Of a stretch of 64,000 nt of DNA, positions 35,322-48,983 are shown in pieces. The notes under the pieces are model-generated. The model was not told the DNA's origin, did no database searches, and saw only the letters and a list, made by a program, of their open reading frames with translations. Position 1 is the first letter of the stretch; every line of letters begins with the position of its first letter. Where the stretch lies: the IMG/VR virus record IMGVR_UViG_3300028840_006257, positions 149,011 through 213,010 of that record; one strand, given 5' to 3'. The position numbers and the translations under genes were made by a program.

Positions 35322-35386
35322 ACAACTGATGGAGCAGGGCGCCGCGCGTTTGAGTCTGTGGTGTGTAACCGACATCGTCTTCTCGG

Positions 35387-35459
35387 TGAGCCGGGTGGGT
35401 CACGATCCCACGGCCTGCGGGTTAAGAGTCCGCCGCTCTGCCTACTGAGCTACCGGCCC
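35387..35459 (-). tRNA. tRNA-Lys(CUU)
   Basis: Cloverleaf, loop CTCTTAA, atypical T-loop ATCGTGA. Confidence 0.88.
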
Positions 35460-35509
35460 TGGAGACGCACTCCAGCGATGCCCGAGGGCACGCGAGGCGT
35501 CCCCCCAGG

Positions 35510-35539
35510 CTAGGTCTTGCGTTTCAGTCGGACAGTCAC
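35510..35539 (-). CDS. putative leaderless mini-ORF MTVRLKRKT
   Basis: GTG 8 nt after the -10 box; AAA and AAG codons; upstream of both Lys tRNAs. Confidence 0.4.
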   Translation of the reverse strand: MTVRLKRKT

Positions 35540-35547
35540 GGGAATCC

Positions 35548-35576
35548 GTTGTACGCGACGAGGGGCGCCCTGTCAA
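35548..35576 (-). promoter_or_regulatory. sigma70-type promoter
   Basis: TTGACA-17-TACAAC. Confidence 0.7.
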
Positions 35577-35585
35577 GCCTCGGGC

Positions 35586-36506
35586 TCAGACGATGCACTC
35601 GCACGGCCGGTTCTCGTTCTCCTCCTCCTGCTCCTGGAGGACCGGGGAGAAGTAGTCGAAGATCGTAGGGCGCCCGTGCCACTCGAGGGCCTCTCGAGCG
35701 TGGGCCCAGAAGAGGGACGCCTCCGTGTTCTCGGTCGCCTCCACCTTCGCCTCCCTCATGATCGCGAAGTCGGCCTCGAGCTCCTCTAGCCGGACGTTCC
35801 GCAGGATGGTGTGGCCGATGTGGGCCTCGGCCTTCTTGGCCTTCTCCCAGAGGTCGGGTCGGGTGCAGTAGACGATGTACCAGTGGCGCCTGCCGGCCCT
35901 GAGGCACGCCGTGCAGTTCGCGTGCTTGAAGACCCCGTAGGTAAGCGGCGGCTCTATCCCGATCTCCCTGGTGGACTCGATGGTGCGGCCGGTCCAGCGA
36001 GCGAGTGGGTAGTCGGTCTGGTATCCCATGTCCCCCAGGACGGCCGTGCGCCTCTCGATCCTGTGATCCTCGTACGCGTCGAACCCGTAGTAGACGACGC
36101 AGTTCTTCTCCGGTTCCATGTTCGCCGCGAGCCACTTGTGGAAGGGCTCCGTCTTGAACCTGTGCGTGCAGAGCACGGACGTGGCGCCGACCTTGAAGCC
36201 CGTGTGCTTGATGCAAACGTCGAACTGGTCCATCGTGTCCCAGCTCGGATAGTTCGCGTACGTGATCTCGACTCCGAGGTAGCCGGCGACCTCGCGCTTG
36301 AAGCGCTTGATGTCCGGGTCCTCGACCGACGGGTTGATGTCGTGGTTGAGGAGGATCAGATTCTCGGTCCCGTGGCGACGCGCGACCTCGACGGCCACGA
36401 GCGCCGAGCTGTGGCCCCCGCTGAAGCACACGACGTGCTTCGTGGTCTCGTCGATCCTCGGCATCATCTGGGGGTCTCCTAGAGGACGACCAGCGAGGTC
36501 GCTCAT
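35586..36506 (-). CDS. PAPS-reductase-like (PP-loop) protein
   Basis: VCFSGGHSS PP-loop; CT..FK.EP, YPL, HANCTAC; C-terminal PCEC. Confidence 0.75.
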   Translation of the reverse strand: MSDLAGRPLGDPQMMPRIDETTKHVVCFSGGHSSALVAVEVARRHGTENLILLNHDINPSVEDPDIKRFKREVAGYLGVEITYANYPSWDTMDQFDVCIKHTGFKVGATSVLCTHRFKTEPFHKWLAANMEPEKNCVVYYGFDAYEDHRIERRTAVLGDMGYQTDYPLARWTGRTIESTREIGIEPPLTYGVFKHANCTACLRAGRRHWYIVYCTRPDLWEKAKKAEAHIGHTILRNVRLEELEADFAIMREAKVEATENTEASLFWAHAREALEWHGRPTIFDYFSPVLQEQEEENENRPCECIV

Positions 36507-36534
36507 TCTACGCCCCGACGGACCTCGGTCCTTT

Positions 36535-36822
36535 TCACGAAAGGTCGAGTTCCCGCAGCTGCTCGTGAAAATCCAGCAGATGCCGCCGTTCCTGGCGCGT
36601 GAGTGCCTCGAAGCTGCGGCCGAAGACCGTGAAGCCGAAGTGGCGACGCGGATTCCCGCACGAGTAACACGAGCACCAGGCCAGGTTGTCGGCTAGGCGC
36701 AGGGCCGCCTGATGGAGCTCCTCCTCGGTGAAGCGGGCGCCGCTCCACCAGCGCCTCTGGATCCTCTTGACGTGGGCGATCATCCTCGCCCGGTGATGGC
36801 GACGCAGGGCTCTCTTGGACAT
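36535..36822 (-). CDS. small basic protein with CSCxxCGNPR motif
   Basis: GAGGAGG RBS; Arg-rich. Confidence 0.7.
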   Translation of the reverse strand: MSKRALRRHHRARMIAHVKRIQRRWWSGARFTEEELHQAALRLADNLAWCSCYSCGNPRRHFGFTVFGRSFEALTRQERRHLLDFHEQLRELDLS

Positions 36823-36946
36823 GACGGCCTCCTCGGCCCGCCCGGTCCCGAGAGCCTCCTGCTCCGGGCCGGGCTAGGTCGTGATCGGACCGCCGCGTGC
36901 CTTGTCGCGCATCACGCCCCCTCTATACATCAACTCGAGGCCCGTG

Positions 36947-37579
36947 TCACCGTTTGAAGGGTCGTTCGACCTCGGAGAGAAAGCGGTATCCGAGAGAGTC
37001 GATCTCCTCTCCGAAGCGACGCCGGACGATGGCCCTGGTCTCGTCGTCGTAGTAGGACGGCCACGGCATCTTCTCGGTCGTGACGTTCGTCCAGGAGAGG
37101 CGGACGGGCTCGATTCCGAACCTGTCGAGGAACATGTCGAGGTCGTCCTGGAGGCGCTCGTAGCGGAGGGCGTAGTCCGCGTCCTGCCAGAAGATCTTGC
37201 CGGTCCTGAGGTACGGACCTCCGGGCATTCCCTCGTCGTAGACCTCGACGAAGTGACGGAAGGTGACCTCTCGGTCCAGGTGCTTTTCGAGGACTTTCCT
37301 CTGTCGCAGCCACCAGGTCACGAGCAGGTCGTACGGGTTCCTGATCGTCGTGACGGCCAGCTCGACGCCCACGAAGGAGTCGGGTTGGCGCTTCCTCAGC
37401 TCGGCGCGCGTCGCGTGGTGGGTCGCCCTGGGAAACCAGTGCTCGATCTCGAGGTCGCGGACCTCGTTGATGTCGCTGACTACGGCCCCCTCTAGCGTCG
37501 CGAGGGCTCGCGTGGTGGCGATGGAGGCCGTGTGCGGGGTCGCCAGGTAGATGAACCTTCCGGGAAGTAGGACCGCCAT
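36947..37579 (-). CDS. sulfotransferase family 2-like protein
   Basis: FIYLATPHTAS, IRNPYDLLVTWW, RYERLQDD, YYDDE..LGYRF. Confidence 0.7.
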   Translation of the reverse strand: MAVLLPGRFIYLATPHTASIATTRALATLEGAVVSDINEVRDLEIEHWFPRATHHATRAELRKRQPDSFVGVELAVTTIRNPYDLLVTWWLRQRKVLEKHLDREVTFRHFVEVYDEGMPGGPYLRTGKIFWQDADYALRYERLQDDLDMFLDRFGIEPVRLSWTNVTTEKMPWPSYYDDETRAIVRRRFGEEIDSLGYRFLSEVERPFKR

Positions 37580-37665
37580 CGTGCGTCCTCGTGGGCGCGT
37601 GCGGCCCACGTCTAGGGGCCGTCAAAAGGGCGGTTATCGTCCCCCGAAGATCGGCGCGTGACCGC

Positions 37666-38358
37666 TCAGGCCCTGCGCCTCTCGTCGAGGATGGCTTGGA
37701 TGGCCCGGAAGCGACGGTTGCTCTCCTCGGCGAGCTCGTCGAGGCTCATGGGGACGATCTCGCGCTCGAGCCACGCCCCCAGGCTCTGCGGGGCCTCGGC
37801 CGGAGGGACGCCGAGGTGCAGATAGTGAGGTTTCACGGAGAGGAGCTGCCGCACCATCGGTCGGCTGTGGGTCGTGACGAACACGCCCCTCGTCTGCTCG
37901 GGAAGATCGGCCACGAACTCGGCCACGACCGTTCCAGCTCCGGCCGCGGCCGCCTCCCCCATGCCGATGTCGGGCTCGTCCCAGTAGAGGAGGTGCGAGT
38001 GCGTCCGAGCTCGGCACGTGCTGATGGCCGTCCTCACCGTCATTCCCGAGTTCTCTCCGGTGGAGCGGAAGCCCTCGTCTCCGTAGACGAAGCCCTTCAT
38101 CGCCCCCATCATGTTCATGCCGGCGCGGGCCTCCATGCTGAGGTGGATGACCTCCTTGATGGAGGTGTGGCTCTTGGCCGACGCCTGAACGCAGCGTCGG
38201 AAGAAGCTCTTCCCGCTCGCGTTCTCTCCGAGCACGAGGAAGAGGGGCGACGACCCCTTCACCCAGAGGGCCGGGATGGCGGGTTCGTCGCCGACGAAGT
38301 ATCGCCAGCTACCGAGGATGTTTCCGACGATCCAGAGGCCGGTGCTCGGCTTGCTCAT
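37666..38358 (-). CDS. stand-alone ABC-type ATPase
   Basis: GENASGKS, STGE signature, WDEPD, VTTHS. Confidence 0.8.
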   Translation of the reverse strand: MSKPSTGLWIVGNILGSWRYFVGDEPAIPALWVKGSSPLFLVLGENASGKSFFRRCVQASAKSHTSIKEVIHLSMEARAGMNMMGAMKGFVYGDEGFRSTGENSGMTVRTAISTCRARTHSHLLYWDEPDIGMGEAAAAGAGTVVAEFVADLPEQTRGVFVTTHSRPMVRQLLSVKPHYLHLGVPPAEAPQSLGAWLEREIVPMSLDELAEESNRRFRAIQAILDERRRA

Positions 38359-39197
38359 CGGTCTCCTCCGTCGAACAGGAGGATCCGGTCGAGCATGGCC
38401 GCCGGGAACCTGCGTCGCAGGATCTCCTCGGCCTCCTCGCGCGAGTGCTTCATGGACCTGTGCGTGAGCACGAGATAGTCGCCCTCGAATTTCTCGCAGT
38501 GCTCGGCCATCTCGGCCACGTGCGTGTGGCCGTAGCGCCGCGCGCCCTCGACGTTCGCGTCGTCCATCTCCCAGGTCGTGACCTCGTGGACGAGCACCTT
38601 GGCCCTCCGAGCCCTCTCGTGCTCCAGCAGGAAGTCGATCCGGGTGTCGCCCGAGACCACCAGGAGGGTGCTCACCACGTCGTCCGTGACCTGCACGCCC
38701 TCCCGACGGAGGCGCCCTATCTCGGAGCCCTCCATGCCGACGAACTCGGTCTTGAGCTTGCTCGTGGTGCGGTCGACGCCCCACCCGAGCGACGCCCCCC
38801 GGTGCCAGCTCCGCATCGCGTGTACGACCGCGCCGCGTCCGAGCTCGAAGAAGTAGCCGGGCCTCGCGGGGTAGAGGCGAACCTTCGCCTCGTGCTCGCT
38901 GTCCCGCTGCACGTCGCGCATCGCCTCGAGGAGCCTCTCCATCGGCTCGCCGAGCTCGTCCGGTAGGTAGACGCTCAGCGTCGCCTTGTTGCGCCGAATG
39001 GAGCGCAGGCTCACGATGTACGGGAGCGCCGCCACGTGGTCCGCGTGACCGTGGGTCAGGAAGACGTGGTCGACGGTCGCCCCTGGCACCGCGCCCGCGT
39101 CGAACACAGCGCGGATCTCGGGGACGTGGAACGCCGTCTGGCAGCCGCCCTGGGCGAACCCGTGCAGCGTCACGCCGCCTATGCTGATCTTCTCCAT
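38355..39197 (-). CDS. RNase Z-like metallo-beta-lactamase
   Basis: FDAG, THGHADH, SGDT, HEVT, GHTH, LTH.S. Confidence 0.85.
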   Translation of the reverse strand: MEKISIGGVTLHGFAQGGCQTAFHVPEIRAVFDAGAVPGATVDHVFLTHGHADHVAALPYIVSLRSIRRNKATLSVYLPDELGEPMERLLEAMRDVQRDSEHEAKVRLYPARPGYFFELGRGAVVHAMRSWHRGASLGWGVDRTTSKLKTEFVGMEGSEIGRLRREGVQVTDDVVSTLLVVSGDTRIDFLLEHERARRAKVLVHEVTTWEMDDANVEGARRYGHTHVAEMAEHCEKFEGDYLVLTHRSMKHSREEAEEILRRRFPAAMLDRILLFDGGDR

Positions 39198-39239
39198 GAT
39201 CACCTGCACGGGGCGTTCGTGAAATTTACAGAACCCCCG

Positions 39240-39431
39240 TCAGAAGGCGCTTGGAAACCTCTGATGGGACTGTCCGCGCGGAGGGCGCTTCGGGGGCGGC
39301 TGCGCGTCTTCGGGTTCGACACGAGCCCCACAGCGGGCACAGAAGCGTCTCCCGTTCTTGTCGGGGCTGGTCAGCATTCCGCGGTGGGTGCACAGCGACA
39401 TGCGGTCGTAGTGGGTGAAAAGCAGTGACAT
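39240..39431 (-). CDS. small Zn-finger protein
   Basis: CTH...CARC. Confidence 0.45.
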   Translation of the reverse strand: MSLLFTHYDRMSLCTHRGMLTSPDKNGRRFCARCGARVEPEDAQPPPKRPPRGQSHQRFPSAF

Positions 39432-39451
39432 CTTGGATTCTTTCGAGGTTG

Positions 39452-39524
39452 TGCCCCAGGACGGAGTTGAACCGCCGACACTCTGGACTTCAGCCAGATG
39501 CTCTACCGCCTGAGCTACCGGGGC
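39452..39524 (-). tRNA. tRNA-Phe(GAA)
   Basis: Cloverleaf; TCTGG-CTGAAGT-CCAGA. Confidence 0.9.
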
Positions 39525-39525
39525 G

Positions 39526-39601
39526 TGGTCCCTCGGGCGGCGCTTGAATCCGCGTCTCCTGGGCTTCAACCAGGCGCTTGAACCGTCTCAGCTACCGAGG
39601 G
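39526..39601 (-). tRNA. tRNA-Phe(GAA), divergent copy with CCA
   Basis: CCCTCGG/CCGAGGG-A-CCA; CCTGG-TTGAAGC-CCAGG; imperfect T-stem. Confidence 0.75.
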
Positions 39602-39646
39602 GCATGGCATTGCGCCGAGCCGCTCTCCCGAAGGAGACCGACCCGG

Positions 39647-39799
39647 CTAGGCGAACAGCTCCGCGGTGACGGGGTGCGTGACGGGGATCGAACCCGTAAC
39701 CTCCTGGGCCACAACCAGGCGCTCTGCCATCCGAGCTCCACGCACCATGAGATGATGGTGTGGGGCCTCGTCGGCGTCGGTATGTCGTCCAGCGAGCAC
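39647..39799 (-). CDS. His-rich leader ORF reading through tRNA-His (50 aa)
   Basis: AGGA..GTG; MLAGRHTDADEAPHHHLM.., open to TAG 39649-39647. Confidence 0.5.
   Translation of the reverse strand: MLAGRHTDADEAPHHHLMVRGARMAERLVVAQEVTGSIPVTHPVTAELFA
39673..39746 (-). tRNA. tRNA-His(GUG)
   Basis: G-1:C73 pair; CCTGG-TTGTGGC-CCAGG. Confidence 0.92.
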
Positions 39800-39821
39800 G
39801 GTCTCGGTTCCTGAAGTGTTG

Positions 39822-39849
39822 AAGATACCCGAAAATCTCCGGGTGTCAA
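39822..39849 (-). promoter_or_regulatory. sigma70-type promoter
   Basis: TTGACA-16-TATCTT. Confidence 0.7.
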
Positions 39850-39855
39850 GTGGAG

Positions 39856-39932
39856 TGGTAGCGGGGACAGGATTTGAACCTGTGGCCTCCGGGTTATGAG
39901 CCCGACGAGCTACCTGACTGCTCTACCCCGCA
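39856..39932 (-). tRNA. initiator tRNA-fMet(CAU)
   Basis: 1:72 mismatch, GGG/CCC anticodon stem, CTCATAA loop, CCA. Confidence 0.92.
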
Positions 39933-40090
39933 TCATAGGGGACTTGCCGTTTCCAGACACCGGGTTCGGTGGAGATCGTCAACCAGGGCTCGATTCTACA
40001 TATCAATCGTCGTCCCCTGCGCTGCTTGACTCCGTCCACTATCGGGCGGTGTTGGGCCGCGGGTGTTCGCCGCGGAGGTCTCCTTTCGTC

Positions 40091-40399
40091 TCAGTGGTAG
40101 TCGTCCCAGATCTCGATGGCCCTCTCCGGCATCTCGTCCCCTTGGACCAGGTCCCAGAAGTCGCGGATGCCATTCCTGGAGAGGATGATTCCGGAGAGGA
40201 ACCGCGAACCGTCACCCGCGCCGAGCTCATCGGCCCACTCGAGTACCTCGTCCAGGCTCTCGAAGTCTCGGACGTGCCACGCCAGCTCCTGCACCTCGTC
40301 GGTCTGCTTCTTGTGGCGGAAGATGCCCTTCTGCCCCGTGCAGCCGTCGGTGAGGACGGGGTTGCCGCTCGTTCTCTTGACCGCGAATCGCATCGGCAT
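40091..40399 (-). CDS. hypothetical protein
   Basis: AGGAG RBS; about 100 aa. Confidence 0.6.
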   Translation of the reverse strand: MPMRFAVKRTSGNPVLTDGCTGQKGIFRHKKQTDEVQELAWHVRDFESLDEVLEWADELGAGDGSRFLSGIILSRNGIRDFWDLVQGDEMPERAIEIWDDYH

Positions 40400-40414
40400 C
40401 TCCTGGGCTGCGTG

Positions 40415-40455
40415 AAAGGAAACCCCGGAAGCCTCTCTCGAGGGGGCGTCCGGGG
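40415..40455 (-). terminator. probable terminator closing the ncRNA cluster
   Basis: CCCCGGA..TCCGGGG hairpin followed by TTTCCTTT. Confidence 0.55.
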
Positions 40456-40466
40456 ACGGGAAAGTT

Positions 40467-40618
40467 GGTCAACGCCGAGTGAAGAACCTTGATCGCGTTT
40501 TCACGCCAGATTTACACGTCTGGTGGCTTTTCCAATTTGCCTACCCCGCCGTGTGGTGGCGGGGGCTGGACTCGAACCAGCAAGGTTTGCTTGTGAGGTT
40601 GATCTGCGGGCGTTGACC
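40467..40618 (-). ncRNA. motif RNA D enclosing a circularly permuted tRNA-Tyr-like body (Y-RNA-like)
   Basis: GGTCAACGCC/GGCGTTGACC outer stem; order T-arm, acceptor hairpin with ACCA loop, D-arm, anticodon arm, variable arm. Confidence 0.75.
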
Positions 40619-40626
40619 TAAAGGGT

Positions 40627-40758
40627 AGAAGCGACCGAGTTGAAAGGCTGTTTGATGCAAGGAGCAGGACTTGAACCTGCGACCTTCGGTTTGTCGAACC
40701 GACGCTCAAGCCAGCTGAGCTGTCTTTGCTTGTGAGCCTGACCTTGGTGGTCGCTTCT
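40627..40758 (-). ncRNA. motif RNA C enclosing a tRNA-Val(GAC)-like body (40656-40729)
   Basis: AGAAGCGACC/GGTCGCTTCT outer stem, AGGCT/AGCCT inner stem, full cloverleaf inside. Confidence 0.75.
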
Positions 40759-40890
40759 TGGTGGCGGACCCTGGAGTCGAACCAGGTTGCTTGTGGACCT
40801 TCAACGGGTGCCTCTCCGGGAGAGGTGAGTGTTGTTGTCGGTTTTACCGATTTACCGTCGGGTGACCCCCCGCCGGGGTCTTGGTCCGCC
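40759..40890 (-). ncRNA. motif RNA B: tRNA-like RNA (GTA loop) with about 60-nt insert in the variable region
   Basis: GGCGGAC/GTCCGCC-A-CCA; CCTGG-TTCGACT-CCAGG; CCGA-CGGTAAA-TCGG. Confidence 0.7.
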
Positions 40891-40902
40891 GTGTTGTAGG
40901 TA

Positions 40903-41014
40903 GTTCCGAGAGCGTGGTCTTGCTGGCTTCAAGACCCCGACCCTCTGGGGTCGGGGATGCGCTTGTAGGACCTGCGCGTTTGGCTTTGATCCTCGAGGGA
41001 GGTTAGCCAGGAAC
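40903..41014 (-). ncRNA. motif RNA A (no tRNA body)
   Basis: GTTCC/GGAAC ends, AGGTC-CTACAAGC motif, strong hairpins. Confidence 0.5.
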
Positions 41015-41026
41015 AGCCGAGAAAGG

Positions 41027-41055
41027 AGTCTGGGGCAGCGCAGAGCCGTTGTCAA
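41027..41055 (-). promoter_or_regulatory. sigma70-type promoter for the ncRNA cluster
   Basis: TTGACA-17-CAGACT. Confidence 0.7.
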
Positions 41056-41064
41056 CCCCCTTTC

Positions 41065-41849: not shown

Positions 41850-41859
41850 GGCTTCCTCC

Positions 41860-42216: not shown

Positions 42217-42222
42217 GCTCGC

Positions 42223-43383: not shown

Positions 43384-44192
43384 ACGCCTTTCTTCTTTCG
43401 CAGGGCCCTCTCAGGGGGCCAGCCTTTCAGGAGACGGTAGCGAATCGTGGTGCTGCTCAGGCCCGTCTCTTCGGCCCAAGCAGCGAGGCATTGAATTTTT
43501 CCGAAGGCCCGAATTTCCCGGTTGTTACGACGATTGCGTGCCTGTTCTTTGCGAGTCGCCCACCGGACGTTTCCAGGTCCGTAGTCCCCATCGATGTCTA
43601 GCCGATCGAGCGTGTGGTGGGGGCTCGGGGAAGGTCCCATGTCTCGTAAAAAGTTGGCGAACGACGTGATCCAGGGTTCGTGGATTCCAATCCCACGACC
43701 TCCGTAATTTTCGTACCCCATGGCTTGCGGATCTAGGCACCTCTTTTTCATTGCGTGCCATGAATTCCACTCAGGTCTCCCCCACCCGCCGTGGATAGTC
43801 GCCGTTTTCCTCAACCTCTCGGCGGCCACCTCCTTGTTCAGACAGCCGCAGGATTTCGTTTTTTCGGCAAGCAAATCGTATCGCCAGATCCACCTTTCCG
43901 CGCCACAAGAGTAGCGACACAGCACCCATTGACGTTCATTCCTGAGAACGGTGAGACGGTGAAAGACAGTGCCCTGCGGGATGGAGACGGTCTTCGAGTG
44001 CTTCTTCCACTTCTCCTGAAGTTGCTGACGTCGCAGGCATCCGCAGGACTTGCTCGCTCCCCTGACGAGATTGCAGCGACGAAACGTCATTGACGTTCCG
44101 CACTCGCAGAGACACAGAACGTCCTTGTAGCCTCGGTCTTCCATGACAGTCAGACGGCCGAAGCGCTCCCCGCTCTCTAAACGTGTCGCCAT
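43380..44192 (-). CDS. free-standing HNH homing-endonuclease-like protein
   Basis: Two G..F.RLTV..C..SKSCGCL repeats; W..MK.RC, YGGRGI, LDR.D.DGDY.P.NVRWAT..EQ..N; lower GC. Confidence 0.85.
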   Translation of the reverse strand: MATRLESGERFGRLTVMEDRGYKDVLCLCECGTSMTFRRCNLVRGASKSCGCLRRQQLQEKWKKHSKTVSIPQGTVFHRLTVLRNERQWVLCRYSCGAERWIWRYDLLAEKTKSCGCLNKEVAAERLRKTATIHGGWGRPEWNSWHAMKKRCLDPQAMGYENYGGRGIGIHEPWITSFANFLRDMGPSPSPHHTLDRLDIDGDYGPGNVRWATRKEQARNRRNNREIRAFGKIQCLAAWAEETGLSSTTIRYRLLKGWPPERALRKKKGV

Positions 44193-45106
44193 ATCACCAG
44201 CTTGCCTTCTCTCACGGCTTGCCGAATGATAAGGGGCAGGCTTTCCAATGTAAAGTAGGTGTCGTAGGACTCCTCCGTGGCGTGGTCGGTGAGGCACACG
44301 CCCGCGTCGATGATGTGGAGGTTCGTGTCGCAGACGCACTCGAGGCGCTGGCCGTCGACGCGGTACTTCACGGCCCACTCTCCGCGACGGACCCTGCGGT
44401 GGTCGAGGTAGTCGGCTCCTCCCACTTGGAGCGCGGCCCTCGCAGCCTCGGCGAAGTTCTCCTGAGCCATGGCGCGTCGGGTGGCGCCGTCCCCGAGTCG
44501 TTCGCGGAGCTCGGCACGGCGCTGCTCCCGGAGCCTCCGGGCCTCCTCCTCGGCACGTCGCCGGGCGATCTCCTGCCGACGCAGCTCGGCCTGCTCGCGT
44601 CGGTACGTCTCCATGCGGAAGGCGGCGTCGAGGGCCGGGACGACGCCGGGAATCCCGGTCACGTCCTTCTTCCCGTCGAGGTAGGCGTCCATGACCTCGT
44701 TCTCGGGACCGAGCGGGAACGCCTGCTCGAGGAAGATGAGGGGGCCCTCTGGATAGATCCTCCCGGCCCGCACTCGGGAGAACCTGTCGAGCTCCTCGGG
44801 GATGAGGTGGACCCTCTCCGAGTGTCCCACGATCGTGGCGGGATCCGGGTCCACGCGGACCTCGTCGGAGACGATCCGGTCCCCGACGAGGTACCCGGTG
44901 ACAGGATTCCTGAGGATCTCAGGCACCGGCTCGGCGCTCTCGAAACTCGTGGCCGTGTTGCCCTCGATCCTGAACCGATACCACCCGAACTCGCGCAGGC
45001 GGCTCCCCAGCTTGAAGGTGCGGGAGTCCGAGTGGAGGGACGCGCCTCCCGTCCAGGGAAGGGTGACGGTCTCCGCGCCGCCGGCCAAGAGGTCCCTCCA
45101 TCCCAT
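44177..45106 (-). CDS. protein with candidate C-terminal E2/UBC-like domain
   Basis: LHIIDAGVCL..YDTYFTLESLPLII resembles UBC G.ICL..W.P..T; operon context. Confidence 0.5.
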   Translation of the reverse strand: MGWRDLLAGGAETVTLPWTGGASLHSDSRTFKLGSRLREFGWYRFRIEGNTATSFESAEPVPEILRNPVTGYLVGDRIVSDEVRVDPDPATIVGHSERVHLIPEELDRFSRVRAGRIYPEGPLIFLEQAFPLGPENEVMDAYLDGKKDVTGIPGVVPALDAAFRMETYRREQAELRRQEIARRRAEEEARRLREQRRAELRERLGDGATRRAMAQENFAEAARAALQVGGADYLDHRRVRRGEWAVKYRVDGQRLECVCDTNLHIIDAGVCLTDHATEESYDTYFTLESLPLIIRQAVREGKLVIWRHV

Positions 45107-45113
45107 GACTACC

Positions 45114-47039
45114 TCAGGCCCACGCGGGTCTCACGAGCAGGTCCGTCCTGATGATCTGCTCCACCAGGGTGACACGACGGGGGCGCGCCCCCTGTTGGAT
45201 GGCGTCGCCCACGGGCGTCGCCGCGACCAGGTTCCTGACGATTCGGGGGATCGCGTAGGGGTCGTCGAACGTGTCCTCCTGGATCATGAAGCACGGGATC
45301 CCCAGCTTGGCCGCCGTGTCCCGGACGGCCGTGGCGTAGTCGTCGCCGTAGTGACGACGGCGCCACGCGGCCCCGCCCTCCTCGGCCACGACCTTGAGGA
45401 AGCCGAACGCCATGGGACGCAGGCCCGAGGCCTCGACCTCGCGCTCGAACGTCCTCTGCTGCTCCTCGTCGCCGGCGAACACGAACAGCGAGTCCTCGTC
45501 GTCCTTCGGCTGGTGGTGTCGGAGCGCCCAGACGCCCTGGCCGTAGTCGGTCGCCCCGCTCGCGTCGATGCCCCTGAAGGCGTGCTCTACGAGCTTGGTC
45601 GACAGCGAGCCGTCGAGCCCGTCGGCGCCCGCTGGTGCCCTGATGACGATCTCCTTCCCCACCGTGTTGAAGCAGGAGACGTGGACCCTGTCGGGCGGGA
45701 ACGACTGGAGGAACTTCGCGATCAGAGGCTTGGCGCGCTCGAGCGCCCCCTTCATCGAGGAGGAGCGGTCCACGATGAAGTAGGTGCGGATGTGTCGAAC
45801 TACCTCCTCGACGACCTTCTGGCTCGCCTTGTCGCCTCCCTCCTCCATCTGGTCTCTGAGCTCCTTCGACCGCACGTTGCGGGCGATGTTGGCCGCGCGC
45901 ATGTCCTCGGCGCGGGCCAGGGCCGCGGCGTGGCGCTCCTTGACGTCCTGCACCTTGAGGAGCCCTAGCTCCTCGAGGGTGGGCGTCATGATGATGATGT
46001 CCTTGTCGGACACGGAGCCCGCGTCGATGGCCGCGGCCACGACCGCGCGGGTGACTCCGATCTCCTTCGGGAGCAGGCCGACGATGCGTTTCCATCCGGG
46101 CCTGTCCTCCTCGATCTTGCGGCAGACGTCCTCCTCGCTGAGGTGCGCCCAGGACTCGGCCACCTTGACGTGCTTGCCGATCGCCATCTCGCGGCGTCCG
46201 TCCTCCGCCTGCTTCTGCTTCCACCGCAGTAGCTCGAAGAACCACTCGGAGCTCGGCTTGTAGCCGATCTTCCTGGCGAGGGTCATGACCGTGGTCCTGA
46301 ACCCGGCCTTCACGAGCCCCTCGAGCATCTTCGGGTTCTCCTCGCGGTACCGGAGCCACTTCTCCACGGCCTTGGGCCATCGGCCCAGGAAGGGACGCCT
46401 GGCCGACCGACCGAAGCCGAGCTCGCGGTTGATGGCCGCGATCTCGGGCACGGTCAGGACCTCCCAGATGCGCAGGAGCAGCTTCGGGTTCAGGTCCCGG
46501 TTCTTCTCCTGAAGGAGCATCATGGCCTCGCCCACGTCGCGGTAGTCTTCGTCCTCGAACAGGACCTCGCCGGCGTCGACGACGGGATCGCCCTTGCGAG
46601 ACTGCACCAGCATGAAGGCCGCGAGCACGACCTTCAGGTCCCGGTGCTCCTGACGGAACGCGTAGCTCGCCCAGCGCGCGGCGAACTCGTTGTCCATCTG
46701 CCACACGGCGGCGACCTGCCTGTAGAACCAGACGGCGACCTCGGGGAAGAGGCCGCTCTTGCGGTACAGCCCGATCTCACGGCCACCGTGGACGACCCTG
46801 TCGTCGCCGTCCATGGTGCCGATCTGGACGCGCTGCTGCTTCTTCCCGCGCCTCTCGAGGCGGTACACGACGCGCTCGCCATTCTCGCCCGCCTTGTGGG
46901 TGACGGGTTCCCACCTGACTCCGACAGTCGTACGCTGGTCGGGAACCACGATCCCGGGGCGTCCATGATATAGATGGTCCTGATGAGCGAGCAGTGTGTT
47001 GATGATCTGCTCGGCAGGTCCTAGACTTTCCTTTTCCAT
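45114..47039 (-). CDS. Ro60/TROVE-like helical protein with C-terminal vWA domain
   Basis: vWA MIDAS VDRSSSM, GATD, AGD; N-terminal FAARWASYAF..R, TLARKIGYKP, ESW echo TROVE motifs; GAGGAG RBS. Confidence 0.65.
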   Translation of the reverse strand: MEKESLGPAEQIINTLLAHQDHLYHGRPGIVVPDQRTTVGVRWEPVTHKAGENGERVVYRLERRGKKQQRVQIGTMDGDDRVVHGGREIGLYRKSGLFPEVAVWFYRQVAAVWQMDNEFAARWASYAFRQEHRDLKVVLAAFMLVQSRKGDPVVDAGEVLFEDEDYRDVGEAMMLLQEKNRDLNPKLLLRIWEVLTVPEIAAINRELGFGRSARRPFLGRWPKAVEKWLRYREENPKMLEGLVKAGFRTTVMTLARKIGYKPSSEWFFELLRWKQKQAEDGRREMAIGKHVKVAESWAHLSEEDVCRKIEEDRPGWKRIVGLLPKEIGVTRAVVAAAIDAGSVSDKDIIIMTPTLEELGLLKVQDVKERHAAALARAEDMRAANIARNVRSKELRDQMEEGGDKASQKVVEEVVRHIRTYFIVDRSSSMKGALERAKPLIAKFLQSFPPDRVHVSCFNTVGKEIVIRAPAGADGLDGSLSTKLVEHAFRGIDASGATDYGQGVWALRHHQPKDDEDSLFVFAGDEEQQRTFEREVEASGLRPMAFGFLKVVAEEGGAAWRRRHYGDDYATAVRDTAAKLGIPCFMIQEDTFDDPYAIPRIVRNLVAATPVGDAIQQGARPRRVTLVEQIIRTDLLVRPAWA

Positions 47040-47041
47040 GG

Positions 47042-47255
47042 CTAACTCCTCATGTGGGTTCGAATTCTGTGACAGACAGAGCAGACAAGGTCGCACTTGG
47101 CGATCTCAGCGAGAAGGAGAGGCACAGAGCCGCGGTAGACAAGGGCTGACACTTTGTCGATTTTCGTGGCCGGGTTACGGTGATCGAAATCCATCGCACA
47201 GGACGGAAAGGTCTTGCCGCAGTCAGCACACGGCCCTTGCTTTCTTATCGGTCAT
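47042..47255 (-). pseudogene. HNH endonuclease remnant
   Basis: PCADCG..P..MDFDH..EIAKCDLVCSVCHRIRT; the RBS-led ATG at 47255 is out of frame. Confidence 0.7.
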
Positions 47256-47414
47256 GGTCTTGTTCCTCTCTCATTCGTGCAAAGTGGAGCACCTCGGGCC
47301 TTCCCTTGTACTCCAGACGCAACGTAAAAAGCCGACCCTCCTGCAAACAGGGCCGAAATCCGTGTTTCGCTCCTCTTATGCCCTTGAAGGGCGTTTTTTC
47401 CGTTGATCCTTGGG

Positions 47415-47488
47415 TCCCGGAGGAGAGACTTGAACTCTCGACCTCCCGCTTATGAGGCGGGCGCTCTCGCCAGCTGAGCTACTCCGGA
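47415..47488 (-). tRNA. tRNA-Met/Ile2(CAU)
   Basis: Cloverleaf; CCCGC-CTCATAA-GCGGG. Confidence 0.88.
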
Positions 47489-47516
47489 GGTTGTGGACGC
47501 GTTTTCTGGGTCTCGG

Positions 47517-47590
47517 TAGCGGGGGTCGGATTCGAACCGACGGTACCCGGATCATGAGTCCGGCGCCTTACCTGACTTGGCTACCCCGCA
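47517..47590 (-). tRNA. tRNA-Met(CAU) with 1:72 mismatch
   Basis: CCGGA-CTCATGA-TCCGG. Confidence 0.85.
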
Positions 47591-47610
47591 TCGTGTTGCC
47601 GGGTTCCTTT

Positions 47611-47642
47611 TGGTGGATGTGGGAAGACTCGAACTTCCGAAG
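47611..47642 (-). pseudogene. orphan tRNA 3' half
   Basis: GGAAG-TTCGAGT-CTTCC-CACATCC-A-CCA with no matching 5' half nearby. Confidence 0.65.
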
Positions 47643-47650
47643 GCAGACGG

Positions 47651-47724
47651 TCGGCCCGGCTGGATTCGAACCAGCGATCTCCACTGTATCAGAGTGGCGT
47701 CCTCACCAACTAGACCACAGGCCG
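47651..47724 (-). tRNA. tRNA-Ile(GAU)
   Basis: CCACT-CTGATAC-AGTGG; Asp/Glu-style D arm. Confidence 0.82.
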
Positions 47725-47788
47725 AGCTGGGAATCGCAATCTCGCTGTCGGGAGCGCCCATCGTCTTCTCCTTTCCTGGTTGTCTCGG

Positions 47789-47862
47789 TAGGCCCGCCCG
47801 GACTCGAACCGGGGACCCCCCGTCGTGTCGAGACGGTGCTCTTCCTGCTGAGCTACGAGGCT
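47789..47862 (-). tRNA. tRNA-Val(GAC)
   Basis: CCGTC-TCGACAC-GACGG; one acceptor mismatch; C33. Confidence 0.8.
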
Positions 47863-47865
47863 GTG

Positions 47866-48054
47866 TCATTGTAGGCCCGCCCGGATTCGAACCGGGGACC
47901 CCTGTCGTGTGAAGGCAGTGTTCTCCCACTGAACTACGGACCTGCATGGGCGGGGTGAACGGGACTCGAACCCGCGACCTCCGAATCGACAATCCGGCGT
48001 TCTGGCCATCTGAACTACCACCCCAAGGCGATCGTCATCGTCATCATCAGCCAT
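47866..48054 (-). CDS. poly-Asp leader ORF reading through tRNA-Asp and tRNA-Val(CAC)
   Basis: AAAGGAGG RBS, ATG GCT, six Asp codons, CGC CTT, then the tRNA-Asp 5' end. Confidence 0.6.
   Translation of the reverse strand: MADDDDDDRLGVVVQMARTPDCRFGGRGFESRSPRPCRSVVQWENTAFTRQGSPVRIRAGLQ
47872..47943 (-). tRNA. tRNA-Val(CAC)
   Basis: Loop TTCACAC; 3' end nearly identical to Val(GAC). Confidence 0.85.
47951..48024 (-). tRNA. tRNA-Asp(GUC)
   Basis: CCGGA-TTGTCGA-TTCGG; G73. Confidence 0.9.
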
Positions 48055-48096
48055 TGGACTGTCCTCCTTTCGGTTGCGGATTTGAGGGTCTTGCTG

Positions 48097-48169
48097 AGCC
48101 GGAGGTGGGAATCGAACCCACGAGTTTCCTCTTTACCAAAGAGGTGCCTTTCCACTTGGCCACACCGGC
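48097..48169 (-). tRNA. tRNA-Thr(GGU)
   Basis: CCTCT-TTGGTAA-AGAGG. Confidence 0.88.
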
Positions 48170-48175
48170 GTCGGA

Positions 48176-48439
48176 TCAGTCCCAATGCGGTAGAACTTCA
48201 ACAGGGTCCTGGTCCTGAAGATGTTTCGTCAGGAGTTCAGTTGTCGCCGCGTCTTCTGAGTTCTCTGGAGCGGCACCTTTCAGCATCGCTTCGAACCATG
48301 TTCGATGCTCGGCTCGGAGACGTCCGTCTAGTGCCCGCTGAAGCCTCTCCATACGGTATGCGCCGCGCGGATTGCCGTTCTTTTCATCCGCATCGTCAAG
48401 ACTTTGCGTGTATCTGAGGAAATTTTTGACGGTGATCAT
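48176..48439 (-). CDS. hypothetical protein inside the tRNA array
   Basis: AAAGGAG RBS; lower GC. Confidence 0.55.
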   Translation of the reverse strand: MITVKNFLRYTQSLDDADEKNGNPRGAYRMERLQRALDGRLRAEHRTWFEAMLKGAAPENSEDAATTELLTKHLQDQDPVEVLPHWD

Positions 48440-48481
48440 GGATTTTCTCTCTCCTTTCAGTTCTGTAACCTGGGTACACTG

Positions 48482-48555
48482 AGCCCGCGGTCGGAATCGA
48501 ACCGACGAACCTGCCGATTACGAATCGGCCGCTCTGCCGACTGAGCTACACGGGC
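48482..48555 (-). tRNA. tRNA-Thr(CGU)
   Basis: GCCGA-TTCGTAA-TCGGC. Confidence 0.92.
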
Positions 48556-48590
48556 GCGTTTTTGTCTCTTCTCTCGATGAAAGTTCTCGG

Positions 48591-48662
48591 AGCTGGCGAT
48601 GGGAGTCGAACCCGCAACCGCCTGATTACAAATCAGGTGCTCTACCGTTGAGCTACGCCAGC
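48591..48662 (-). tRNA. tRNA-Thr(UGU)
   Basis: CCTGA-TTTGTAA-TCAGG. Confidence 0.92.
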
Positions 48663-48684
48663 AGGAGCTGACGAGGCCGCGGCA

Positions 48685-48847
48685 CCGTGTTGAGCATCCC
48701 CTCCGGGGTCCCCGGCGGGCTTCCTTCAGTTGGTCACGCGCCGGGAAATGCTCAACACGGGGTCGTATCGCCCGAAATGGGGCGTACGAAGGCCACGACC
48801 GCCATCAGGGCGGCTGTCGTGGCCGATGTTGTCGTGGAGCGTTTCAT
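48685..48847 (-). promoter_or_regulatory. attenuator-like leader: Thr-rich mini-ORF (48847-48752) plus 13-bp inverted repeat
   Basis: MKRSTTTSATTAALMAVVAFVRPISGDTTPC; its stop lies inside CCGTGTTGAGCAT/ATGCTCAACACGG. Confidence 0.55.
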
Positions 48848-48933
48848 GGCGTGTGTGTGCGCGTCGGTCCTGCGCTTTAACCCCCGTCCGTCAGGACGGT
48901 GCGCCGATCCTGCCAAGGGAACGACGCAACCCA

Positions 48934-48962
48934 TGTGTACGCCGTCTTTCGCCGCAAGTCAA
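48934..48962 (-). promoter_or_regulatory. sigma70-type promoter of the tRNA array
   Basis: TTGACT-17-TACACA. Confidence 0.55.
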
Positions 48963-48983
48963 GCGCCTTCTCGTCCGCGGCTC

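What the first reader, a model, noticed from the sequence alone, without database searches (positions are those of the whole stretch)
35458..48962. tRNA genes preceded by mini-ORFs rich in their own cognate codon: candidate tRNA feedback system
Seen: (a) AAAGGAGG + MA-DDDDDD-RL ends at the 5' end of tRNA-Asp. (b) Promoter + MLAGRH..PHHHLM runs into tRNA-His, and the same frame ends ..LFA-TAG before the two tRNA-Phe genes. (c) AAAGGAG + MGAPDSE-I-A-I-PS with ATT codons runs into tRNA-Ile(GAU). In a-c the last cognate codon is 6-7 nt from tRNA position 1 and the frame stays open through the tRNA. (d) ATG ATG overlaps the start of tRNA-fMet, and AAAGGA..ATG overlaps tRNA-Met at 47590. (e) MTVRLKRKT with AAA and AAG precedes both Lys tRNAs. 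(f) A Thr-rich leader precedes three Thr tRNAs. Inference: with ample charged tRNA, ribosomes run through and unfold the precursor; when that tRNA is depleted, for example by host anticodon nucleases, they stall and the tRNA can mature. I know of no described system like this.
Basis: partly seen in the sequence, partly recalled or inferred. Interest (0 to 1): 0.92.

Follow-up and report, generated by a model that had tools for sequence, protein, structure and literature searches.

The report
Cognate-codon leader ORFs gating phage tRNAs
In this huge phage and about twenty relatives, the genes for Asp, His, Ile, Lys and Thr tRNAs are preceded by tiny translatable reading frames packed with the codons those same tRNAs read. 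This looks like amino-acid-operon attenuation rewired so that each tRNA gene senses its own supply, an arrangement I found described nowhere.

Summary
The core observation is real and well above chance. The window is part of a 213-kb IMG/VR phage contig with 16 tRNA genes on the minus strand.

- **Leaders in the window:** Shine-Dalgarno-led mini-ORFs rich in the cognate codon abut tRNA-Asp (MADDDDDDRL), tRNA-His (..PHHHLM) and tRNA-Ile. A 31-codon Thr-rich leader precedes the three Thr tRNAs, and a K-x-K mini-ORF precedes tRNA-Lys.
- **Enrichment across relatives:** among 596 tRNAs from about 120 related loci, cognate-codon enrichment is strong (z = 7.4). It is confined to Asp, His, Ile, Lys and Thr, and is absent antisense and downstream.
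- **Conservation:** the leaders differ greatly in sequence but keep the start signals, the reading frame and the cognate richness.
- **Predicted Thr switch:** an "anti-acceptor" segment captures the 5' acceptor strand of the tRNA. In all 7 orthologues, constraint folding lets the tRNA fold only when a ribosome sits on the Thr codons.

My best reading is ribosome-mediated attenuation whose output is tRNA folding and maturation rather than transcription termination: a stall means more tRNA.

The Met and Phe items are not supported, and "frame open through the tRNA" is not general. Rfam and five literature searches found no match. Everything here is computational; there are no expression data.

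The parts
48752..48847 (-). Thr leader ORF, 31 codons plus TGA (MKRSTTTSATTAAL..GDTTPC*). There is no canonical SD (CACGCC precedes the ATG), and the frame is also open upstream to the ATG at 48934.
   Evidence: a 30-31-codon ORF is conserved in 7 loci and its indels are in frame. ACA codons number 18 observed against 4.2 expected.
48685..48760 (-). Conserved branched hairpin directly after the Thr leader. The leader's stop codon lies inside its 5' strand.
   Evidence: RNAalifold on 7 sequences; the 5' strand is almost invariant, CGTGTTGAGC.
48667..48673 (-). Anti-acceptor segment (CGTCAGC), complementary to the 5' acceptor strand of tRNA-Thr(UGU) at 48662-48656.
   Evidence: Duplex energies in the 7 loci are -8 to -15 kcal/mol. 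For 596 other spacer/tRNA pairs the mean is -6.0 (sd 2.7), and 3% reach -12 or lower.
48589..48662 (-). tRNA-Thr(UGU), the first tRNA after the Thr leader. It is followed by tRNA-Thr(CGU) at 48481-48555 and tRNA-Thr(GGU) at 48096-48169.
48025..48070 (-). Asp leader: SD AAAGGAGG (48070-48063), ATG at 48054, MADDDDDDRL. The last Asp codon ends 6 nt before tRNA +1.
   Evidence: SD-led Asp-rich leaders occur before tRNA-Asp in 10 loci.
47947..48024 (-). tRNA-Asp(GUC).
47725..47774 (-). Ile leader: SD AAAGGAG (47774-47768), ATG at 47761, MGAPDSEIAIPS(S), with two ATT codons.
   Evidence: Orthologues read ME..SDISDIIY or ..DIGPIIY.
47649..47724 (-). tRNA-Ile(GAU).
39746..39849 (-). His unit: promoter-like TTGACA-16-TATCTT (39849-39822), GTG at 39799, and leader MLAGRHTDADEAPHHHLM, whose last codon overlaps G-1 of tRNA-His.
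   Evidence: Orthologous leaders are found in L002, L009, L081 and L004, with CAY synonymous variation.
39671..39745 (-). tRNA-His(GUG).
35510..35576 (-). Lys unit: TTGACA-17-TACAAC (35576-35548), then 8 nt, then GTG at 35539. The mini-ORF MTVRLKRKT* carries one AAA and one AAG and may be leaderless.
   Evidence: K-x-K(-x-K) mini-ORFs followed by a hairpin precede tRNA-Lys(CUU) in 5 loci. This is weaker evidence than for the other leaders.
35233..35459 (-). tRNA-Lys(CUU) at 35385-35459 and an 88-nt tRNA-Lys(UUU) at 35233-35320.

Best explanation
These are translated regulatory leader ORFs that make individual phage tRNA genes respond to the supply of their own aminoacyl-tRNA. In effect it is ribosome-mediated attenuation whose output is folding and 5' maturation of the tRNA, not transcription termination.

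Shown by sequence and comparison:
- SD-led (for Thr, ATG-led) short ORFs carry phased runs of cognate codons and sit directly upstream of tRNA-Asp, -His, -Ile, -Lys and -Thr.
- They are conserved in this character across diverged phages.
- They are biased towards the codon that depends most on the downstream isoacceptor.

Inferred mechanism, long form (Thr):
- Without a ribosome, or with a ribosome that has run to the stop codon, an anti-acceptor segment just upstream pairs with the tRNA's 5' acceptor strand. The cloverleaf, and hence the RNase P substrate, cannot form.
- A ribosome waiting at the Thr codons frees a downstream ORF segment. That segment pairs with the anti-acceptor, and the tRNA folds and matures.

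Inferred mechanism, short form (Asp, His, Ile, Lys-UUU):
- All cognate codons lie upstream of a roughly two-codon spacer before tRNA +1.
- A ribosome pausing on them holds the leader single-stranded without entering the tRNA.
- A ribosome that decodes them quickly moves onto or into the tRNA's 5' strand and blocks folding or RNase P access.

The net logic is that a scarce cognate tRNA yields more mature tRNA.
For: 1. Cognate-specific enrichment. Mean cognate fraction in label-blind SD-led ORFs is 9.4% against 5.8% after permutation, z = 7.4. By amino acid it is Asp 8.2x, His 4.2x, Lys 3.7x and Ile 3.0x. At least 3 cognate codons in the last 12 occur in 10/29 Asp, 5/15 His, 7/28 Ile and 9/40 Lys tRNAs, against 2-4% of other tRNAs. 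Thr and Asp are also enriched in a 210-nt scan. Antisense and downstream controls are null.

2. Signs of translation. All 10 Asp leaders have (A)AAGGAG(G) followed by ATG in frame with the Asp codons. Cognate triplets fall in frames 0/1/2 as Asp 55/0/3, Ile 18/0/0 and His 9/1/2 (the leaders were chosen for their in-frame cognate count). Peptides diverge (MADDDDDDRL, MNIENDDCDDVDDTY, MPRTNTEPLDQDSDEDDDTS) while composition is kept, with GAT/GAC and CAT/CAC interchange. Thr leader indels are multiples of 3, and ORF length and stop position are fixed.

3. Isoacceptor and rare-codon bias against the phages' own long ORFs. GAT is 39 of 55 (expected 23), ATT 12 of 17 (expected 3) and AAA 24 of 34 (expected 8). 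ACA is 18 observed against 4.2 expected in Thr leaders, whose first downstream tRNA is Thr(UGU).

4. Switch prediction for Thr. The MFE acceptor stem forms only with the ribosome A site within the Thr-codon run, in 7 of 7 loci. It never forms without a ribosome or at the stop. Anti-acceptor complementarity is far stronger than in other spacers.

5. Short leaders. With 60 nt of native upstream sequence the acceptor stem survives in the MFE fold for 31% of leader tRNAs against 67% of other tRNAs (Fisher p = 4e-4). In L002 the predicted ON window is exactly the eight Asp codons.

6. Geometry. The last cognate codon ends 5-6 nt before +1 in 10 of 10 Asp leaders and in both listed His leaders.

7. 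No minus-strand intrinsic terminator accompanies the leaders, so the readout is not classical termination.
Against: - No expression, ribosome-occupancy or tRNA-level data exist. The phage is uncultured and its host is unknown.
- The loci are relatives, so the counts are not independent events. The permutation z-scores overstate the number of independent origins.
- MFE folding of tRNAs with flanks is error-prone. The Thr pairing model was formulated after I had seen the alignment, and the ribosome footprint (-15 to +14 or +8) is an assumption.
- For Asp, His and Lys short leaders there is no significant direct complementarity to the tRNA 5' strand (only Ile, p = 0.02). ON windows are noisy, and weak for the window's own Asp leader.
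- A ribosome paused on the last cognate codon (5-6 nt from +1) may itself occlude the RNase P site. That would argue for the opposite sign.
- The Thr leader lacks an SD.
- The A/T-ending codon bias could partly reflect the lower GC content of intergenic DNA.
- Tightly packed arrays in relatives (Rctr197k, L123) and the unrelated Streptomyces phage Braelyn array lack such leaders, so the device is dispensable.
Confidence: 0.5

Rival explanations
1. The same translated sensor with the opposite sign. A ribosome stalled on the cognate codons, which lie only two codons from the tRNA, covers the RNase P site and the first acceptor base pairs. Scarcity of the tRNA then blocks maturation, giving a feed-forward or bistable switch or a timing device rather than a homeostat.
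For: The last cognate codon ends 4-8 nt before +1 in most leaders. By the known ribosome footprint (own knowledge) this puts the front of a paused ribosome at or over tRNA +1. In one search the last one or two cognate codons often fall outside the predicted ON window.
Against: The Thr element predicts ON precisely during stalling, in 7 of 7 loci. Most cognate codons lie 15-45 nt upstream, where a paused ribosome leaves the tRNA free. A circuit that makes less of a tRNA when it is scarce has no obvious benefit.
Confidence: 0.1
2. RNA-only sensing. The runs of cognate triplets pair with the anticodon of free (mature or uncharged) tRNA, like multiple T-box specifier codons, and translation is irrelevant.
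For: Cognate triplets are by definition complementary to the anticodon. In several Asp leaders the SD-ATG spacer (GACAACC, GACAGUCC) is also complementary to the tRNA-Asp anticodon arm (reading structures).
Against: A strong SD and an ATG in frame with essentially all cognate triplets are conserved. Indels are in frame. There is no T-box or other riboswitch hit in Rfam at E <= 1. Three-base pairings outside a ribosome are too weak without a T-box-like scaffold, and none is conserved.
Confidence: 0.07
3. The mini-ORFs are translated for a reason unrelated to sensing. They might load ribosomes to protect long tRNA/ORF polycistrons from Rho or RNases, help separate tRNAs during processing, or make small peptides. 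On this view the cognate richness is a by-product, for example local reuse of the tRNA being made.
For: About 40% of all tRNAs with free upstream sequence have some SD-led ORF under my lenient definition. ORFs and tRNAs are interleaved in these arrays. MK.K starts could reflect the general preference for AAA after ATG (own knowledge).
Against: This does not explain why composition follows tRNA identity and isoacceptor. It does not explain why peptides diverge freely except in the cognate residues. It does not explain the Thr alternative pairings.
Confidence: 0.13
4. Chance or shared-ancestry artefact: one ancestral Asp-rich or His-rich spacer inherited passively by related phages.
For: All loci come from one clade defined by a shared VWA-domain protein. 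No leaders were found in two outgroup arrays.
Against: Five different amino acids each match their own tRNA. Leader sequences have diverged beyond alignment while keeping SD, ATG, frame and cognate richness. Neighbouring protein identity falls to about 51% among leader-bearing loci. Passive inheritance would not keep third-position-only variation.
Confidence: 0.03

Closest known systems
Ribosome-mediated transcription attenuation of amino-acid operons (thrL, hisL, pheL, trpL, ilv/leu leaders)
   Same: Both have a short leader ORF with a run of 'regulatory' codons cognate to the controlled product, as described in PMC1183508 and PMC3082878. In both, ribosome position selects between mutually exclusive RNA pairings. 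The Thr leader here even begins MKRSTTT.., much like the E. coli thr leader (own knowledge).
   Different: The controlled genes are the tRNAs themselves, not biosynthetic or synthetase genes. No terminator hairpin with a U-tract is present. The predicted off-state is capture of the tRNA's 5' acceptor strand. The short leaders have no room for any attenuator at all and abut the tRNA. There was no Rfam hit to Thr/His leader families.
T-box riboswitches
   Same: Both are cis-acting leaders that read the status of one specific tRNA through codon-anticodon complementarity.
   Different: T-boxes are untranslated and bind tRNA directly through a specifier loop and a T-box/NCCA pairing. They control synthetase or amino-acid genes. 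Here the leaders carry an SD and an ATG, no T-box motif is present, and there is no Rfam hit.
Translational attenuation by stalled ribosomes (erm, cat leaders)
   Same: In both, a ribosome paused in a short leader ORF remodels the downstream RNA structure post-transcriptionally.
   Different: In erm and cat leaders the stall is drug- and peptide-dependent and unmasks a downstream ribosome-binding site. Here the stall would depend on tRNA supply and would unmask a tRNA fold.
Synthetic RNase P riboswitch (PMC7897497)
   Same: In both, the output is control of tRNA 5' processing by alternative pairing at the 5' end of the precursor.
   Different: The riboswitch is engineered, ligand-driven and acts on the single-stranded 5' leader, and no natural counterpart is cited there. 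Here the switch would be natural, ribosome-driven and would sequester the acceptor strand itself.
Phage lambda bar minigenes (own knowledge)
   Same: Both are very short phage ORFs whose translation interacts with the pool of one tRNA.
   Different: bar minigenes are two-codon ORFs that sequester a tRNA as peptidyl-tRNA and are not linked to a tRNA gene. There is no evidence here for that effect.

Membership tests
Classical leader-peptide transcription attenuator | Short translatable leader ORF upstream of the regulated gene | tested here: met
   An SD plus ATG/GTG ORF of 10-31 codons precedes tRNA-Asp, His, Ile, Lys and Thr. The Thr leader lacks an SD.
Classical leader-peptide transcription attenuator | Run of regulatory codons cognate to the regulated product | tested here: met
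   The label permutation gave z = 7.4. Per-amino-acid tables are, and codon bias is.
Classical leader-peptide transcription attenuator | Mutually exclusive RNA pairings selected by ribosome position | tested here: inconclusive
   This is met in silico for Thr in 7 of 7 loci. For the short leaders the result is noisy. There is no structure probing.
Classical leader-peptide transcription attenuator | Intrinsic terminator (GC hairpin plus U-tract) as the output element | tested here: not met
   There is no terminator-like site on the minus strand in 47300-49100 or 35150-40900. The hairpin after the Thr leader is not followed by a U-run.
Classical leader-peptide transcription attenuator | Regulated genes are amino-acid biosynthesis, transport or synthetase genes | tested here: not met
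   The next genes are tRNAs.
Rfam Thr/His leader families | Match to the covariance model | tested here: not met
   cmscan of 33000-51000 at E <= 1 returned only tRNA and weak unrelated hits.
T-box riboswitch | Specifier loop and T-box sequence; match to the Rfam T-box model | tested here: not met
   There was no hit at E <= 1. The leaders are 30-60 nt, too short for a T-box.
RNase P-gated tRNA precursor (design analogue, PMC7897497) | Alternative pairing at the 5' end of the precursor that hides the RNase P substrate in one state | tested here: inconclusive
   An anti-acceptor:acceptor helix of 7-8 bp is predicted in all 7 Thr loci, with one-sided and compensating changes. Cleavage was not testable.

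The most novel reading that the evidence does not exclude
This would be a previously unknown class of cis-regulation: each tRNA gene carries its own ribosome-read 'fuel gauge', a mini-ORF of its own codons. Decoding speed at that mini-ORF would directly gate folding and RNase P maturation of that tRNA. That would give product-specific feedback on individual tRNAs, which has not been described for any organism. Huge phages might use it to top up exactly those tRNAs (Asp, His, Lys, Thr, Ile) that run short or are destroyed by host tRNA-targeting defences during infection.
Probability: 0.4. Interest if true: 0.92.

Novelty: new variant of a known kind. Interest (0 to 1): 0.85.

Why it matters
- **A gap in tRNA regulation.** As far as I know, bacterial and phage tRNA genes are regulated only globally. 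No tRNA-specific feedback on tRNA production is known to me, and none turned up in my searches.
- **A new output for an old sensor.** If these leaders work as inferred, the classic leader-peptide sensor has been coupled to RNA folding and processing of a non-coding product. Phages would then tune their tRNA supply codon by codon.
- **A handle on why phages carry tRNAs.** The system offers a concrete way to separate two explanations, codon supply and replacement of tRNAs lost to host defences (PMC10264068).
- **A possible tool.** It is a compact natural part for tRNA-responsive control in synthetic biology.
- **Directly testable.** The units are 100-300 nt and can be tested in laboratory strains or in cell-free systems.

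Tried and rejected
- **DNA search in GenBank phages:** only tRNA bodies matched, so there is no close sequenced relative. A protein search found one uncultured relative (Rctr197k). Its tRNAs are tightly packed and lack clear leaders.
- **Relatives of the 87-aa ORF inside the Thr array:** the search found only the phage itself.
- **Met item:** an ATG at the tRNA 5' end is no more frequent at Met tRNAs than at others, so I rejected it.
- **Phe item:** no enrichment, so I rejected it.
- **Other amino acids:** a search for SD-led cognate-rich leaders found nothing convincing.
- **'Frame open through the tRNA' as a selected feature:** stop positions vary widely. For one tRNA-Asp sequence that I translated by hand (not a tool result), two of three frames are open anyway.
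- **Direct anti-acceptor complementarity in the short leaders:** not significant except for Ile. TIR-tRNA duplex ranks were only suggestive.
- **Outgroup test on Streptomyces phage Braelyn's array:** no leaders, so the device is not a general property of actinophage tRNA arrays.
- **Neighbouring 660-aa protein as a Ro/TROVE partner of the Y-RNA-like modules:** not supported by Pfam, PDB sequence search, an AF2 model with Foldseek, or BLASTP against the Braelyn Ro-like protein.
- **Five literature searches (one further narrow search):** no description of leader ORFs controlling tRNA genes.
- **A collection-wide DNA pattern scan for such leaders outside this clade:** considered and dropped, because poly-Asp gene starts would swamp it.

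Full report
**What the window is.** ARAGORN finds 15 tRNA genes, all on the minus strand between 35385 and 48662. Rfam adds a sixteenth, an 88-nt tRNA-Lys(UUU) at 35233-35320. GC content is about 65%. The left half of the window carries long plus-strand ORFs. The tRNA region is interleaved with minus-strand ORFs:
- an HNH endonuclease, a ThiF-like protein, a PAPS-reductase-like protein and a metallo-beta-lactamase-fold hydrolase;
- a peptidoglycan-binding, endolysin-like protein;
- a 660-aa VWA-domain protein.

The window is part of IMG/VR contig IMGVR_UViG_3300028840_006257 (213 kb). No sequenced GenBank phage is close at the DNA level. The only GenBank record encoding the VWA protein is the uncultured 'Virus Rctr197k'.

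**Checking the observation in the window.**
- **Asp.** AAAGGAGG, 8 nt, then ATG GCT, then six GAT/GAC codons, then CGC CTT, then tRNA-Asp +1 at 48024.
- **His.** A TTGACA-16-TATCTT promoter-like site is found by the scan, against 0.4 expected in shuffles. A GTG-started frame follows, MLAGRHTDADEAPHHHLM, whose last codon overlaps G-1 of tRNA-His.
- **Ile.** AAAGGAG, ATG, MGAPDSEIAIPS, with two ATT codons, running into tRNA-Ile.
- **Thr.** ATG at 48847 opens MKRSTTTSATTAAL..GDTTPC*, ending 89 nt before tRNA-Thr(UGU).
- **Lys.** TTGACA-17-TACAAC, 8 nt, then GTG ACT GTC CGA CTG AAA CGC AAG ACC TAG, ending about 50 nt before tRNA-Lys(CUU).
- **Met.** The ATG(ATG) overlaps at the Met tRNAs are there, as is the ..LFA-TAG end of the His frame.

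**Relatives.** Using the 660-aa VWA protein that follows the main array, I fetched 5 and then about 115 further loci from IMG/VR and JGI metagenomes, with protein identity from 100% down to 35%. Many come from contigs of 100-600 kb, that is, huge phages. ARAGORN on all loci gave 1181 tRNAs. Of these, 940 are unique, and 596 have at least 45 nt of tRNA-free upstream sequence.

**Is it more than chance?**
- **Test without any ORF model.** I took the maximum over three frames of the cognate amino-acid count in the last 12 codons. The cognate mean is 1.438 against 1.297 after label permutation (z = 3.9, 0 of 5000).
- **Which amino acids.** The signal comes from four amino acids. At least 3 cognate codons occur in 10/29 Asp, 5/15 His, 7/28 Ile and 9/40 Lys tRNAs, against 2.3%, 2.4%, 3.2% and 4.1% of the other tRNAs. 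The other sixteen show no significant excess, although Thr (8/39 against 14%) and Tyr lean upward in this 12-codon window.
- **Test with a label-blind ORF choice.** Choosing one SD-led ORF per tRNA without regard to its label, the cognate fraction is 9.4% against 5.8% (z = 7.4, 0 of 10000). By amino acid it is Asp 8.2x, His 4.2x, Lys 3.7x and Ile 3.0x.
- **Controls.** The reverse complement of the same regions and the regions downstream of the tRNAs show nothing (z = 0.6 and 1.6; 0-2 cases per amino acid).
- **Wider scan.** A 210-nt scan adds Thr (9/38 against 9%, p = 0.01) and confirms Asp (p = 3e-8).
- **Caveat.** The loci are related, so these numbers do not count independent origins.

**What conservation shows.** The leaders fall into families that keep the signals and the composition but not the sequence.
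- **Asp:** MADDDDDDRL, MPDDDDDDDDRL, MNIENDDCDDVDDTY, MNNNDSDDADDIY, MDDDDDVHDPN, MDSDDSDDRDLY, MDAPDDCDDR, MPRTNTEPLDQDSDEDDDTS and MDSPDSDD*. All have an (A)AAGGAG(G)-type SD and an ATG.
- **His:** ML..HTD.DE.PHHH(LM/TY), METQTHTDPEHHLH and ..LQHHH.
- **Ile:** ME..SDISDIIY and ..DIGPIIY.
- **Lys(UUU):** MK.K...P..(G/A)PK.., found in eleven more distant loci.
- **Lys(CUU):** M..RLKRKT* and MFCMK(L/R)KSKL*, followed by a hairpin.
- **Thr:** a 30-31-codon ORF in seven loci.

Cognate triplets are phased with the ATG. Counts in frames 0/1/2 are Asp 55/0/3, Ile 18/0/0, His 9/1/2 and Lys 34/11/10. These leaders were selected on the in-frame count, but the emptiness of the other frames is still informative. 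Third positions vary (GAT/GAC, CAT/CAC) while first and second positions are kept. Thr-leader indels are multiples of three, and the stop codon keeps its place inside a conserved hairpin. Leader-bearing loci reach down to about 51% identity in the neighbouring protein.

**Codon choice.** I compared the cognate positions with the long ORFs of the same loci.
- They prefer GAT (39:16, expected 23; p = 2e-5), ATT (12:5, expected 3; p = 4e-6) and AAA (24:10, expected 8; p = 2e-8).
- In Thr leaders ACA is 18 observed against 4.2 expected.
- AAA and ACA are the codons that depend on the UUU and UGU isoacceptors encoded immediately downstream. GAT and ATT are the wobble-read, rarer codons.
- Part of this could be plain AT-richness of non-coding DNA.

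**Geometry.**
- In the short leaders the last cognate codon ends 5-6 nt before tRNA +1 in all 10 Asp and both listed His cases. It ends 4 nt before in four Ile cases and 5-8 nt in half of the Lys cases. That is a spacer of about two non-cognate codons.
- Where the ORF ends is not conserved. It can end before the tRNA (TGA 2-4 nt upstream), at the universal U8-A9-G10 TAG (five Lys leaders), in the D-loop (four Ile leaders), or 80-260 nt further on (most Asp leaders and both His leaders).
- From what is known of the bacterial ribosome (mRNA must be single-stranded to about +11 from the P-site; own knowledge), a ribosome with the last cognate codon in its A site would have its entry just at tRNA +1. 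All cognate codons are therefore read before the ribosome must open the tRNA. This step is inference.

**The Thr element behaves like an attenuator in silico.**
- **Structure.** The seven orthologues align from the ATG to the tRNA. RNAalifold gives a hairpin inside the ORF, then a long branched hairpin whose 5' strand contains the stop codon, then a helix between a spacer segment (GGCCACGCTGGC; CGTCAGC in the window) and the first eight bases of tRNA-Thr.
- **Anti-acceptor pairing.** It scores -8 to -15 kcal/mol against -6.0 +/- 2.7 for 596 other spacer/tRNA pairs.
- **Constraint folding.** Without a ribosome the tRNA's 5' acceptor strand is held by the spacer (6-7 of 7 pairs) in all seven. 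The first trial placed one footprint on the Thr run. It released the strand in four of the seven loci, where the ORF segment GTCGTGGCC pairs with the spacer and the acceptor stem forms 7 of 7.
- **Codon-by-codon scan.** The acceptor stem forms only for A-site positions within or next to the Thr run, in all seven loci. It practically never forms later or at the stop.
- **Caveats.** I formulated the pairing scheme after seeing the alignment, and MFE folding is approximate. Still, the position-specific result is not built in.
- **No terminator.** No terminator-like site lies on this strand.

**Short leaders.**
- With 60 nt of native upstream sequence, the acceptor stem survives in the MFE fold for 31% of leader tRNAs against 67% of others (p = 4e-4). 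The 5' strand is captured by upstream sequence in 35% against 13% (p = 0.006).
- Scanning gives ON windows that overlap the cognate runs in several leaders. In L002 the window is exactly the eight Asp codons, and in L014 it is D-S-D-E-D-D-D. For both His leaders it spans the two residues before the HHH run and its first His. Other leaders are noisy, including the window's own Asp leader.
- Direct complementarity between leader and 5' acceptor strand is significant only for Ile. There the SD-ATG region (GACAGACCGA, or GACCATGG) pairs with the tRNA start and differs between subfamilies in step with the tRNA.

**Best explanation.** These are translated sensors of cognate aminoacyl-tRNA supply that gate the folding and maturation of the linked tRNA.
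- **Shown:** cognate-specific, phased, conserved, SD-led ORFs.
- **Predicted in silico:** the alternative pairings.
- **Inferred:** ribosome pausing, RNase P as the step controlled, and the sign (a stall means more tRNA).
- **Confidence:** about 0.75 that these are translated regulatory leaders reading the cognate tRNA, and about 0.5 for the full mechanism with that sign.
- **Rivals:** opposite sign, RNA-only sensing, translation for other reasons, and ancestry artefact. They are listed with their evidence in the Rival explanations section.

**Comparison with what is known.**
- The sensing half is the classical leader-peptide attenuator (PMC1183508, PMC3082878). The output half is not. There is no terminator, and the regulated genes are tRNAs, so two defining features of the family are not met.
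- T-box membership fails, with no motif and no Rfam hit.
- The nearest thing in output is an engineered RNase P riboswitch (PMC7897497).
- Five full-text searches found nothing describing leader ORFs that control tRNA genes, and one further narrow search was also negative.
- Work on phage tRNAs and tRNA-targeting defences (PMC10264068) gives a possible biological setting but no evidence for it here.
- The device is not universal. Rctr197k and Streptomyces phage Braelyn lack it.

**Verdict.**
It is not real for Met and Phe.
- I rate it a new variant of a known kind (attenuation logic with a new output), of high interest, resting on computation only.

Noticed in passing
window ~40810-40750 and ~40600-40480 (minus strand); L002 9070-9190 and 15050-15900; L004 7490-7620: Repeated modules that read like circularly permuted tRNAs: a T-arm, an acceptor hairpin closed by ..ACCA.., then UAG and a D-arm, each preceded by a CACAAGC motif. 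Rfam aligns 40525-40583 to the tRNA-like domain of the bacterial Y RNA YrlA (24.5 bits, far below the gathering score). This suggests several Y-RNA-like genes per phage, some placed between tRNA-Thr(GGU) and the Asp leader in relatives.
   Followed up: partly
window 45114-47096 (minus strand): A 660-aa protein is conserved next to tRNA arrays in more than 100 huge-phage contigs. Only a C-terminal VWA domain is recognisable. The N-terminal 430 residues are confidently modelled by AF2 (pLDDT 81.6) but have no PDB match. It is not detectably Ro/TROVE, although Y-RNA-like modules lie nearby.
   Followed up: partly
window 35233-35320 (minus strand): An 88-nt tRNA-Lys(UUU) with an aberrant D-arm and a long extra arm. 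ARAGORN missed it and Rfam found it at 38.9 bits.
   Followed up: partly
window 39856-39932 and 47515-47590 (minus strand): Met-anticodon tRNAs that start with U1 opposite U72. The first has the initiator GGG/CCC anticodon stem and an encoded CCA. The motif ATGATG overlapping its 5' end recurs in five relatives (L001, L002, L010, L081, L093), without an SD.
   Followed up: partly
leaders in window and in L002, L009, L010, L019, L036, L079, L101, L102, L112, L115, L116: A proline codon often sits directly before the cognate codons (P-HHH, GP-K, AP-K, P-II, P-DD). This may be a context that slows peptide-bond formation at the sensing codons. I did not test it statistically.
   Followed up: no
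L004 7345-7411: A tandem (ACCAAC)n repeat lies directly before tRNA-Thr(GGU). It reads T-N-T-N.. with ACC codons in one frame and P-T-P-T with ACA codons in another, but has no start codon or SD. It occurs in this locus only.
   Followed up: partly
L002 17025-17187: A 55-codon ORF with a CxH...CxxC (zinc-ribbon-like) pattern runs from just after tRNA-His into tRNA-Phe. It is not Phe-rich.
   Followed up: no
window 48176-48439 (minus strand): An 87-aa ORF with a good SD is embedded between tRNA-Thr(CGU) and tRNA-Thr(GGU). It has no Pfam or PHROG hit and no relative in IMG/VR other than the phage itself.
   Followed up: partly
window 35586-36506, 38355-39209, 41065-41826, 43380-44378 (minus strand): Genes interleaved with the tRNAs: a PAPS-reductase-like protein (PHROG 424), a metallo-beta-lactamase-fold hydrolase, a ThiF-family protein and an HNH endonuclease.
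   Followed up: no
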